A stretch of 64,000 bases of DNA from Saccostrea cucullata (taxonomy: Eukaryota). The stretch spans positions 186,001-250,000 of the forward strand of contig NW_026927343.1 of NCBI RefSeq assembly GCF_032062105.1. Reading direction: 5' to 3'. A model generated the notes under the pieces. It searched no databases. It was not told the DNA's origin and worked only from the letters and a program-made list of their open reading frames with translations. Each line of letters starts with the position of its first letter. Positions within the stretch are counted from its first letter, which is position 1. Positions 11,601 to 13,593 of the stretch are shown here, piece after piece. Made by a program: the position numbers and the translations under genes.

Positions 11601-11840
11601 CTTCCAGAATTCCGTCTCTAACAATAAAGAGATGTTGATGGACTTCCAGTCCCCTGGTGGACTCTGTAACTTCACTGATATTTTGACTTTGACCTCTTAA
11701 TCGCTTCAGTAGCGTTGTTTTTCCAGCCTCAGCACATCCAACAAGTATTCCTCTGGCATGGGAAACAGTTGTCTTCTCCTTCCTCAGAAACTTCTTCAAC
11801 TCATCCATATAAACCGTATCCAAATCATCATTGCTTGCAC
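11601..11840 (-). CDS. Internal exon encoding the start of a Roc (Roco-family) GTPase domain
   Basis: RGILVGCAEAGKTTLLKRL (G1 P-loop) and TESTRGLEVH (Roc-type G2). Acceptor ttgttttcag at 11841, donor GAAG|gttag at 11600; 240 bp, phase 1-1. Confidence 0.8.
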
Positions 11841-12701
11841 CTGAAAACAATAAAGTCATATATACTTATCATAATTAGATTACCCCTGCCCCCGTTTTTT
11901 CAAAAACCAACCAGACTAAATAATCAAAAATAACTAAATCATGTTTTAAATATTAAGGTTATTTAATAGAAGATCATCCTTTTCCTTAACTTTTATGTAG
12001 AGAAAAGTATAAGATAATCATTTGTTTCTAAGAAAAGGTTTTGAATATGAAATCTTTACCATCAGTCTGTTATACTGGGGACTTACTGGAATCAACAAGT
12101 CTACTAACCCCCCCCCCCCCCCTCCTTTTTTTTTATTTCCACACTTCAATTAACAGTATACTGGTACATTTATATAATCATTGCGGATTTTATTAAGCAA
12201 TCACTCAATGATTCTTTCAGACTTTCACCTCACTCAACTCACTAAAACATTCTCTGAATAAACAAAAAACTTTTTTAAATCACATTGGGAGGATTTTTAT
12301 ACGTTGGTTCAGAGCTAACAGGAACAGCATTATTACATCTCAAGTAATTCCTATTGGTATTCCTATTGTTACACTTGATCAAGTTAAGCTCTCTTTTTAT
12401 GTAATTCCTGACTCAATCTGATATTGGCAAATTTTATTGCAATTGGTTAATTATTCATAAATAATTATACATCAACATAATCAGGATAATGTACCTGATA
12501 ATCTGTTTATTTATATTTTTTATACAATCAACATTTTGTTTAAAATATCTCAATCAAAAGTAAACATGGTAAAAAAAATACAAACAACAAAGACTTAATT
12601 GATCATGTTGATGTCCAGACCCTCATTAATATTCAGTATTCACCTTGTTTTATTTATTACTTTGTTTTAACAATTAATTAATATACAGTAAATTAACTTA
12701 C

Positions 12702-13593
12702 TAGTCTGATCATCCCCTTCATAGATAAGTCTGTAAATGTTTACTGTGTTGTTGTTGTATGATCCAACCCAGAGAAGCTGTGTATCACAATCATAACTCA
12801 GGCCGTACGGTACGACTATCCCGTGTTGTTTGGTCTCTATCTGTGTCAGAATGAGACCGTCCTGGTCAATGATATGTACTGTGTGGGTTTTATAATCACA
12901 CAGCAGGATGTGTGACAGCGCATCAGTACAGATTCCACGTGGTTCTAGTCCTGATCCTGATGGAGAACCAGTGTAGGAGAAGCGATGTCTCCCTCTTCTG
13001 TCTGTCACCACTACAGCATCATGGAGGAAGTCAGACACAATAACATCTCCATTGCAGTTCTCTGTGATGTATATAGGATATCTATACAGTCCCTGACCTG
13101 TGTTGTCGTGCTGTATGGTCTGTATGTGTTCTCCTGTGTTGGTGTAACGGTTTACCTGGCCTGTCACTGTATCAGTATTATACATCCCGACCAGCAGGTC
13201 TCCAGTGGAGGGGGAGCTGTAGACACTCCATGGTGTCCATGGTGATGTGTTATAGGGTATCACTATGGTCTTTACTTTATCTGTAGACAGTTTAATGATG
13301 TTATGGTCACTGTCTATATAAATCACATCATTATCACGAGTCACAGTATGTACTCCACCACTATATTTATATAAATCCGTCACATGATCTAGTATGTCAC
13401 CTCTCGTGTTTGTTAAGATGAGATTGCCTTCTCTATCACTGATCCAGGCCCGGTCTGTTGACACGTGGGTAATGTGATAACACTGACCAACACCAGACAA
13501 TGTGACAGATTTTTGTAACACCAGTCTAAACATCACTGACACCAGACTTCTATTTCTTTTTCCTGTGTTTTCAGAATCCAATGTTGATTTCAT
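12702..13593 (-). CDS. Exon encoding an NHL-repeat beta-propeller of the bivalve TRIM-NHL-like type
   Basis: Motifs YPIYITENCNGDVIVSD, HRFSYTG...LEPRGICTDALSHILLCD and PYGLSYD..LLWVG. Donor ACTA|gtaagt at 12700-12701 is phase 1. The ATG at 13593 is immediately preceded by an in-frame TGA. Confidence 0.85.

What the first reader, a model, noticed from the sequence alone, without database searches (positions are those of the whole stretch)
11601..13593. NHL beta-propeller spliced in frame to a Roc GTPase: candidate unusual Roco architecture
Seen: the NHL exon ends in a phase-1 donor (ACT A|gt). The next exon, 0.86 kb downstream, starts in phase 1 and gives ...EGDDQT-S-ASNDDLD...GCAEAGKTTL...STRGLEV with no stop. 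Established: Roco proteins usually have LRR, ANK or kinase domains before Roc, while bivalve NHL propellers are normally the C-terminal domain of TRIM (B-box/coiled-coil) proteins. Inference: a TRIM-derived NHL module was shuffled to become the N-terminal sensor of a Roc(-COR) GTPase, a possible innate-immune receptor. The rest of Roc-COR is not visible and would lie left of the window, beyond the Helitron.
Basis: partly seen in the sequence, partly recalled or inferred. Interest (0 to 1): 0.75.

Follow-up and report, generated by a model that had tools for sequence, protein, structure and literature searches.

The report
Oyster NHL-Roco GTPase with HEPN tail
This is a real six-exon rock-oyster gene that puts a TRIM-type NHL propeller in front of an LRRK2-type GTPase switch and a predicted RNA-cutting HEPN domain; it is one copy of a large, unstudied family that looks like an immune-sensor repertoire.

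Summary
The NHL exon (13611/13593..12702, minus strand) ends in a phase-1 GT donor. The next exon (11840..11601) starts in phase 1 and carries the P-loop.

The rest of the gene exists 32-48 kb left of the window: G3, G4, COR and a DZIP3-type HEPN exon.

At least 37 of 40 NHL-exon copies in this genome have a same-strand Roc exon downstream. All 23 loci examined keep the phase-1 donor and acceptor. In 17 of 23, the Roc-exon open frame holds no Met.

The NHL exon evolves at dN/dS about 0.95 yet is stop-free in 23 of 23 copies. The Roc exon is at 0.12.

My one read-laying run did not display the junction, so direct RNA proof is missing.

The sensor-switch-RNase mechanism is inferred, not shown.

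The scan found this kind before on other DNA of this genome (s1-730932, s1-710899). I found no paper describing it.

The parts
12702..13611 (-). First coding exon: a whole six-bladed NHL propeller. The 5' boundary at 13611 (acceptor aatttacag|a) is inferred. ORF is open from ATG 13593, which has an in-frame TGA just upstream. The family-conserved Met is at 13533. The RefSeq model starts at the internal Met at 13185. The phase-1 donor follows 12702.
   Evidence: Pfam NHL 1.6e-5; ATG 13593 not conserved; the Met equivalent to 13533 is present in 23/23; AF2 pLDDT 91, 24 strands; TRIM2/3 NHL, TMq 0.75-0.81
11841..12701 (-). Intron 1, 861 nt, GT..AG. It holds the read-through stop (12669-12667), an AATAAA just after it, and a poly-G run.
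   Evidence: RNA depth is about 0 in the bins 11861-12047 and 12235-12608, and 0.3-1.6 in the poly-G bin 12048-12234.
11601..11840 (-). Exon 2, 240 nt, phase 1-1: linker plus Roc G1 (GCAEAGKTT) and G2 (STRGLEV).
1..11600 (-). The first 11.6 kb of intron 2, which is about 31.8 kb in all. It is filled with repeats and a transposon-type ORF. The next exon (G3, DFAGQ) is at window -20221..-20724 = C9480:165276-165779.

Best explanation
Shown: window 13611..11601 (minus strand) holds the first two coding exons of one six-exon gene of about 48 kb, RefSeq LOC134274161 of Saccostrea cucullata. The domain order is N-terminal NHL six-bladed propeller, Roc GTPase (with a roughly 70-residue disordered acidic insert between G2 and G3), COR-A/COR-B, and a C-terminal DZIP3-type HEPN domain carrying an R-N-x-L-x-A-H motif. 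It is one of at least about 37 linked NHL-to-Roc loci in this genome, with full-length counterparts in S. echinata. Inferred mechanism (about 30% as a whole): the fast-evolving propeller binds a ligand, RNA or protein, as TRIM-NHL propellers do. Binding changes the GTP/GDP state and the COR-mediated dimerisation of the Roc-COR switch. That brings two HEPN domains together to form an active RNase, which cuts RNA as an antiviral or anti-transposon response. Sister genes that keep NHL-Roc-COR but carry a Death or trypsin-like tail (and possibly TIR) support a sensor-switch-effector logic.
For: Gene structure: P0151 maps at 97.5-100% per exon to six blocks with GT..AG borders. Its sequence reads EGDDQTSASNDDLD. 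Pfam on it: Roc 39.4 bits, COR-A 53.2, HEPN_DZIP3 64.8, NHL weak. Pfam on my own exon ORFs: COR-A 3.8e-15, HEPN_DZIP3 8.7e-19, Roc 4.1e-5. Foldseek on the AF2 model: LRRK1/2 and the C. tepidum RocCOR tandem (3dpu_A, TMt 0.70). The NHL model matches TRIM2/3. Single gene rather than two: 37/40 linkage; donor R|GTRAG in phase 1 in 23/23 loci and a phase-1 acceptor with a pyrimidine tract in 23/23; 17/23 Roc-exon ORFs have no Met; tails after the donor differ and stop 2-20 codons on; 16/16 RefSeq models from two species carry the propeller at residue 1 and Roc-COR-HEPN after it, with a legible NHL-to-linker join in 13 of the 16 rows. Function kept: G1, G2, G3, G4 and the HEPN motif are present in 16/16; Roc exon dN/dS is 0.12. 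Sensor-like propeller: dN/dS 0.95, yet 23/23 copies are stop-free against 1.1 expected under random substitution; it has the lowest pairwise identity of the domains, 69.9%. Expression: RNA reads cover both exons and not the intron.
Against: No read joining 12702 to 11840 was displayed: 15 joints were shown and 16 hidden, and the table was swamped by a repeat at 16746-16860. Most laid reads are 90-95% alike, so they come from paralogues. RefSeq models are computational, and one wrong join could be propagated by homology. The model for this locus starts inside the propeller, at 13185. RNA depth falls upstream of about 13357, so this copy may make only a partial propeller. dN/dS near 1 could partly reflect relaxed constraint. 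No biochemical or expression-under-challenge data exist for any member. G4 reads THTE, with E where I recall D in other Roc domains.
Confidence: 0.8

Rival explanations
1. There are two neighbouring genes. An NHL-only gene ends at the read-through stop at 12667 and uses the AATAAA just after it. A separate Roc-COR-HEPN gene follows. The annotation pipeline merged them.
For: The junction was not displayed among the joints. A stop at 12669-12667 and an AATAAA follow the donor. Many paralogues stay alike to query position 898-925, a little past the donor.
Against: 17/23 Roc-exon ORFs have no Met, so they cannot open a coding sequence. The donor and the phase-1 acceptor are kept in 23/23 loci. Read-through tails are not conserved in length or sequence. 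Linkage is 37/40. Models from two species all join the two parts. A GenBank model from a freshwater mussel, named as a GenBank rather than RefSeq record (so possibly made by another pipeline), may also put an NHL-like region before Roc-COR (weak).
Confidence: 0.07
2. The family architecture is real, but this copy is impaired. Its transcript starts inside the propeller (RefSeq start at 13185), and a TE-laden 31.8-kb intron 2 lowers or disturbs expression, so the copy is on its way to becoming a pseudogene.
For: P0151 starts at the internal Met, and the first 30 residues of its model have pLDDT under 50. RNA depth is 0-1.6 in 13357-13543 against 6-9 in 13170-13356. The paralogue C22277 has the same exons within about 10 kb, against 48 kb here.
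Against: All six exons are open, with intact GT..AG borders. The propeller ORF is open from 13593, and the conserved Met at 13533 is present. Some reads differ from this locus at a single base (table 3, 'cleanest' 0-1). The fall in depth may reflect 5' bias of oligo-dT libraries, or paralogue divergence under the 90% cut-off.
Confidence: 0.15
3. The NHL-Roc-COR-HEPN proteins are not immune sensors. They are housekeeping RNA regulators, like TRIM71 or Brat, that happen to be amplified.
For: The structural neighbours TRIM71/Lin41 and Brat are solved in complex with RNA (entry titles). That they regulate mRNAs is recalled. No challenge-expression data were examined.
Against: There are dozens of recent copies, with dN/dS about 0.95 on the propeller and 0.12 on the switch. 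Sister genes swap in Death, trypsin-like and possibly TIR tails. DZIP3-type HEPN expansions in bivalves sit among NACHT immune-type genes (PMC9646362, passages). These are hallmarks of conflict-driven families, not of housekeeping regulators.
Confidence: 0.1

Closest known systems
Roco family GTPases (LRRK1/LRRK2, MFHAS1, DAPK1, Chlorobium tepidum Roco)
   Same: A Roc G domain directly followed by COR-A/COR-B. Pfam Roc and COR-A score above their cut-offs. The fold matches LRRK1/2 and the C. tepidum RocCOR tandem. The sequence matches M. barkeri Roco2 (4wnr, 5.3e-8).
   Different: The N-terminus is an NHL propeller instead of LRR/ankyrin/armadillo repeats. There is no kinase. The C-terminus is a HEPN domain. 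A disordered acidic insert (pLDDT under 50 at residues 263-331 of P0151) sits between G2 and G3. G4 reads THTE. The Roco review PMC6337361 has no occurrence of NHL, propeller or HEPN (passages).
TRIM-NHL proteins (TRIM2, TRIM3, TRIM71/Lin41, Brat, Thin)
   Same: A six-bladed NHL propeller: Foldseek E 2e-14, TMq 0.75-0.81; phmmer against TRIM2 NHL 7.7e-16.
   Different: No RING, B-box or coiled coil, and the propeller is the first domain rather than the last. Pfam finds no B-box in P0151 or P0001. There is no ORF of 45 aa or more resembling a B-box by eye within 12 kb upstream (these ORFs were not Pfam-scanned).
Oyster B-box proteins with tandem NHL propellers (Magallana/Crassostrea 'TRIM2/3-like')
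   Same: These are the closest propeller sequences outside the Roco genes, at 51-57% identity. The module is about 270 aa.
   Different: They carry a B-box region followed by 2-5 propellers, and have no Roc-COR-HEPN.
Bivalve DZIP3/hRUL138-like HEPN proteins, often fused to NACHT (PMC9646362; PMC3710099)
   Same: A DZIP3-type HEPN domain with an Rx4-6H motif and Asn after the Arg. The family is expanded in bivalves (passages).
   Different: Here the NTPase is Roc-COR rather than NACHT, HEPN is C-terminal, and the repeat sensor is NHL. [quoted passage not shown]
Earlier finds of this scan in the same genome: NHL/B-box Roco with HEPN tail (s1-730932) and Roco-HEPN genes (s1-710899, s1-700951)
   Same: The same Roc-COR-HEPN core, the same genome and the same family-level reading.
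   Different: This subfamily joins the propeller directly to Roc with no B-box. I saw B-box-bearing relatives by Pfam (P0185, P0209).
RNase L (functional analogy only, recalled)
   Same: Repeat sensor, then a dimerising module, then a HEPN-type RNase that needs dimerisation.
   Different: There is no homology outside HEPN. RNase L uses ankyrin repeats and a pseudokinase and is switched by 2-5A, not by a GTPase.

Membership tests
Roco (Roc-COR) GTPases | A Ras-like Roc domain with G1, G3 and G4 motifs | tested here: met
   Pfam Roc 39.4 bits against a cut-off of 27 on P0151. GCAEAGKTT, DFAGQ and THTE are present in 16/16 family models. G4 has E where I recall D in other Roc domains.
Roco (Roc-COR) GTPases | A COR domain directly C-terminal of Roc | tested here: met
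   COR-A 53.2 bits against a cut-off of 35.3, and 3.8e-15 on the exon ORF. The model aligns to the whole RocCOR tandem 3dpu_A (TMt 0.70) and to the COR domain 3dpt_B (TMt 0.70). Pfam COR-B was seen only in the relative P0209, below cut-off.
Roco (Roc-COR) GTPases | GTP binding and hydrolysis, and nucleotide-dependent dimerisation | not testable with these tools
   Needs purified protein.
NHL-repeat beta-propeller | A six-bladed propeller of NHL repeats | tested here: met
   Pfam NHL 25.1 bits against a cut-off of 20. AF2: pLDDT 91, pTM 0.89, 24 strands. The top Foldseek hits are all NHL domains.
TRIM (tripartite motif) proteins | RING, B-box and coiled coil N-terminal of the propeller | tested here: not met
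   No such Pfam hit in P0151 or P0001. The propeller starts at residue 1 of the paralogue models. Nothing resembling one by eye upstream within 12 kb (not Pfam-scanned).
HEPN superfamily, DZIP3/hRUL138 clade | The HEPN_DZIP3 profile and an Rx4-6H motif | tested here: met
   64.8 bits against a cut-off of 27, and 8.7e-19 on the exon ORF. R-N-x-L-x-A-H is present in 16/16. The region is helical with block-mean pLDDT mostly 66-88 (residues 859-1018, with a dip at 974-979).
HEPN superfamily, DZIP3/hRUL138 clade | RNase activity | not testable with these tools
   No assay was possible. Activity of this clade is itself only predicted in the papers seen.

The most novel reading that the evidence does not exclude
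Bivalves may own a class of intracellular immune receptors built on a Roco GTPase rather than a NACHT/STAND ATPase. In this reading, a hypervariable N-terminal NHL propeller recognises foreign RNA or protein. Roc-COR acts as a GTP-gated dimerisation switch. An exchangeable C-terminal effector executes the response: HEPN RNase here, with Death, a trypsin-like protease or possibly TIR in sister genes. This would be a third solution to the sensor-switch-effector design, alongside NLRs and RNase L.
Probability: 0.25. Interest if true: 0.75.

Novelty: new variant of a known kind. Interest (0 to 1): 0.45.

Why it matters
Roco proteins are studied almost only through LRRK2, and what switches their GTPase is still debated. 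Here nature has wired the same Roc-COR core between a fast-evolving binding propeller and a predicted nuclease, in dozens of copies. If this works as a ligand-gated RNase, it offers a simple read-out (RNA cleavage) for how Roc-COR transmits a signal. It would also add a new receptor class to invertebrate innate immunity, which matters for oyster disease. For annotation, it shows that these 'uncharacterized' models are one coherent family, and that the propeller exon is a phase 1-1 module that has been shuffled.

Tried and rejected
Read evidence for the junction. I laid three raw oligo-dT RNA runs and one RNA contig set on window 11300-16900 at 90% likeness. Both exons are covered and the intron is not. 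The joint and loose-end tables were filled by a repeat at 16746-16860 (16 joints and 466 loose ends not shown).

Exon-wise search for short, transcript-derived proteins with the Roc exon. It returned one hit only: a 100-aa metagenome protein labelled RarA, at 62% identity. It was of no use and I did not follow it.

Upstream TRIM parts. On the minus strand from 13500 to 26000 I saw no ORF of 45 aa or more that looked like a B-box, RING or coiled coil. These ORFs were judged by eye, not Pfam-scanned.

ATG 13593 as the start codon. It is unique to this copy; paralogues have Leu, Arg or Ser there. The Met at 13533 is kept in 23/23 loci, so it is the likelier family start.

The Met of YMDELKK as the start of a separate gene. 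I rejected this because that Met is absent in most paralogues.

A first simulation of stop-free ORFs was flawed, because the per-base consensus itself held two stops. Its numbers are not used. One search repeats it with a codon consensus.

NHL before Roc outside oysters. P0105 of Potamilus streckersoni has Roc-COR-TIR and only a weak NHL signal (Pfam 6e-4; hhalign probability 40%). I treat this as tentative.

Literature. None of the papers listed describes an NHL plus Roc-COR protein.

I built no spliced model of my own and searched with none. The exons were searched apart. Sequences that span the splice were used only as the public proteins the tools returned (P0001, P0151 and relatives).
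Full report
**What is in the window.** On the minus strand a 308-aa ORF runs 13593..12667.
- It reads ...YRLIYEGDDQT and then A|gtaagt. The last exon base is 12702 and the GT is at 12701-12700.
- From ATG 13593 this makes 297 codons plus one base, so the donor is phase 1.
- After an 861-nt intron and the acceptor ttgttttcag|, a 240-nt exon runs 11840..11601. It enters and leaves in phase 1.
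- It reads (S)ASNDDLDTVYMDELKKFLRKEKTTVSHARGILVGCAEAGKTTLLKRL...ESTRGLEVHQHLFIVRDGILE and ends G|gttaga.
- Pfam finds an NHL repeat in the first ORF (1.6e-5, above cut-off). In the second it finds only sub-threshold small-GTPase hits, including Roc.

**The rest of the gene.** The window is G000:C9480:186001-250000.
- I fetched 40 kb to its left and compared it with a paralogous locus, C22277, that keeps the NHL exon, the intron and the Roc exon. The two loci are collinear over blocks that turned out to be exons.
- In window coordinates these open frames are:
  - -20110..-20778, with LDFAGQ (G3).
  - -24123..-24245, with VVTHTERK (G4).
  - -32419..-33714, 432 aa.
  - -33993..-34697, 235 aa, with RIIRNSLTAH.
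- Pfam gives Roc 4.1e-5, COR-A 3.8e-15 and HEPN_DZIP3 8.7e-19 on them. The short G4 frame has no hit.
The exons exist, but 32-48 kb away.

**A public model of this very locus.**
- A search of 1.84 billion representatives with the COR frame gave 517 relatives.
- The best, P0001, is RefSeq XP_062597700.1, 'uncharacterized protein LOC134259119 [Saccostrea cucullata]'. It sits on a contig of the length of C3216, where the closest paralogue lies.
- P0001 begins MYKYVLQKS..., carries the propeller at residues 1-274, and reads ...EGDDQTSASNDDLN... into Roc.
- Searching with P0001 found P0151, 'uncharacterized protein LOC134274161 [Saccostrea cucullata]', 1070 aa, on a contig of 298,772 bases, the length of C9480.
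- P0151 maps to my locus at 100% over four exons and at 97.5-99.6% over the other two. The shortfall lies at the block ends, where HSPs run into introns. The six blocks are: 13185..12700, 11844..11602, -20221..-20724, -24138..-24236, -32458..-33663 and -34011..-34697. The donor and acceptor of every intron fit GT..AG.
- Pfam on it: HEPN_DZIP3, COR-A, Roc, and a weak NHL.
- I built no spliced model myself and searched with none.

**One gene or two?** My single read-laying run does not settle this.
- RNA reads from three oligo-dT runs cover both exons, at depth about 2-13 per orientation in the fully exonic bins.
- The intron bins 11861-12047 and 12235-12608 have depth about 0. The poly-G bin 12048-12234 has 0.3-1.6.
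- Most reads are only 90-95% alike, so they come from paralogues.
- The joint table showed 15 joints and hid 16. None of those shown is 12702|11840.

The comparative evidence is strong.
- Of 40 NHL-exon places in the genome, 37 have a listed same-strand Roc-exon match 0.5-20 kb downstream.
- I examined 23 loci: this one, C22277 and 21 paralogues. The 21 were chosen only because NHL and Roc fit into one 10-kb fetch; 14 linked paralogues were left out.
- All 23 have the phase-1 donor followed by GT[AG]AG.
- All 23 have a phase-1 AG acceptor behind a pyrimidine tract, although in many the acceptor has slid 24 nt while keeping the frame.
- In 17 of 23 the Roc-exon frame holds no Met between its upstream stop and the conserved motif, so it cannot be a first coding exon.
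- The read-through tails after the donor differ in sequence and stop 2-20 codons on.
- All 16 full-length RefSeq models of the family, from S. cucullata and S. echinata, carry the propeller at residue 1 and Roc-COR-HEPN after it. The NHL-to-linker join is legible in 13 of the 16 alignment rows.

**Start of the protein.**
- ATG 13593 follows an in-frame TGA and is unique to this copy.
- The Met at 13533 is present in 23 of 23 loci, and the paralogue models start there.
- A conserved acceptor-like aatttacag just upstream suggests a 5' UTR exon further up. This is inference.
- The RefSeq model of this locus starts only at Met 13185, inside the propeller. RNA depth falls upstream of about 13357.
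- The exon product from 13533 folds as a complete propeller: pLDDT 91, pTM 0.89, 24 strands.
- The truncated start of P0151 is modelled below pLDDT 50.
- Whether this copy makes the full propeller is open.

**What the parts are.**
- Foldseek places the propeller next to the NHL domains of TRIM2, TRIM3, Thin, TRIM71 and Brat (E down to 2e-14, TMq 0.75-0.81). phmmer agrees (TRIM2, 7.7e-16).
- The full model matches LRRK1, LRRK2 and the C. tepidum RocCOR tandem (3dpu_A, TMt 0.70).
- Residues 263-331 of P0151, an acidic stretch between G2 and G3, are predicted disordered.
- G1, G2, G3, G4 (THTE) and the HEPN R-N-x-L-x-A-H motif are kept in 16 of 16 models.

**Evolution.**
- Mean pairwise identity among 15 full-length models: 69.9% for NHL, 84-91% for the two Roc parts, 82.4% for COR and 72.1% for HEPN.
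- Nei-Gojobori dN/dS: 0.95 for the propeller exon (253 pairs) and 0.12 for the Roc exon (152 pairs from 18 loci).
- All 23 propeller exons are stop-free. Placing the same numbers of random substitutions on a codon consensus leaves about 1.1 of 23 stop-free. That model is crude: it assumes a star tree and uniform changes.
- Together this points to diversifying selection on the propeller, not decay.
- The propeller is a phase 1-1 module. Its closest relatives outside the Roco genes are Magallana/Crassostrea B-box proteins with 2-5 tandem propellers.
- Sister Roco genes put a B-box between NHL and Roc (P0185, P0209, P0010, P0013, P0019).
- Others replace HEPN with a trypsin-like domain (P0004, P0010) or Death (P0013). 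In a freshwater mussel the tail is TIR (P0105), but the NHL signal there is weak.

**Mechanism.** This is inferred. The propeller binds a ligand, Roc-COR switches and dimerises, and paired HEPN domains cut RNA. That HEPN RNases need dimerisation and that COR mediates Roco dimers are recalled from the literature, not tested here.

**What is known.**
- DZIP3-type HEPN genes are known to be expanded in bivalves, often with NACHT (PMC9646362, abstract and passages; PMC3710099, one table row).
- Roc-COR fused to TIR or MyD88-like proteins is noted in Aplysia (PMC9334734, passages).
- ROCOs as candidate immune receptors with shuffled LRR exons are proposed for brown algae (PMC11378527, abstract).
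- The Roco review PMC6337361 mentions neither NHL nor HEPN (passages).
- Five searches listed no paper on an NHL-Roc-COR protein. Supplements were closed.
- The scan itself has reported the NHL/B-box-Roco-HEPN kind and the Roco-HEPN family on other DNA of this genome.

**Verdict.** The finding is real and its reading is right. It is one member of a large family that is already annotated but uncharacterised, so I rate it a new variant of the Roco kind, of moderate interest.

Noticed in passing
window 1589-3124 (-): A 511-aa ORF inside intron 2 with a Herpes_teg_N (cysteine-protease/deubiquitinase-type) domain, E 8.9e-13. It is flanked by a tandem-repeat tract at about 1000-1850.
   Followed up: partly
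window 8475-9376, 10132-11263, 16971-17570, 17960-18358: Several copies of one tandemly repetitive element match C22277:30632-31674 at 66-80%. The same element flanks the paralogous locus.
   Followed up: no
window 16723-16900: A very high RNA read pile (depth 170-260 per orientation, against about 10 on the gene's exons), with many 'goes back about 115' joints at 16860>16746. This looks like an abundantly transcribed repeat unit. It swamped the joint tables.
   Followed up: no
window 13843-13918 (-): A 76-nt stretch bounded by ttttttag| and |gtaaat, conserved with C22277 as part of the 78.6% block 12491-14102. It may be a 5' UTR exon. RNA depth there is near zero.
   Followed up: no
window 12113-12135 (-): A poly-G run of about 23 bases in intron 1. 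It is the only intron bin with a trace of read depth.
   Followed up: no
P0181-P0262 (public Magallana/Crassostrea proteins): Oyster 'TRIM2/3-like' proteins carry a B-box region followed by two to five complete tandem copies of this roughly 270-aa NHL propeller, spaced by about 44 residues. Multi-propeller TRIM-like proteins are unusual.
   Followed up: partly
L017:5755-5877 (-), G4 exon: The G4 motif of the whole family reads T-H-T-E (16/16 models), with Glu where I recall Asp in other Roc domains. It could affect base specificity.
   Followed up: no
paralogues C22277, L033, L038, L039: In these copies part of the P-loop exon is internally duplicated (...SSRG[IL]TTLLKRLR... repeated), giving two matches to the query and longer frames.
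   Followed up: no
P0264: A 100-aa protein from a JGI metagenome contig of 2072 bases, labelled RarA, is 62% identical to the Roc P-loop exon. It is likely mollusc DNA in an environmental sample with a misleading name.
   Followed up: no
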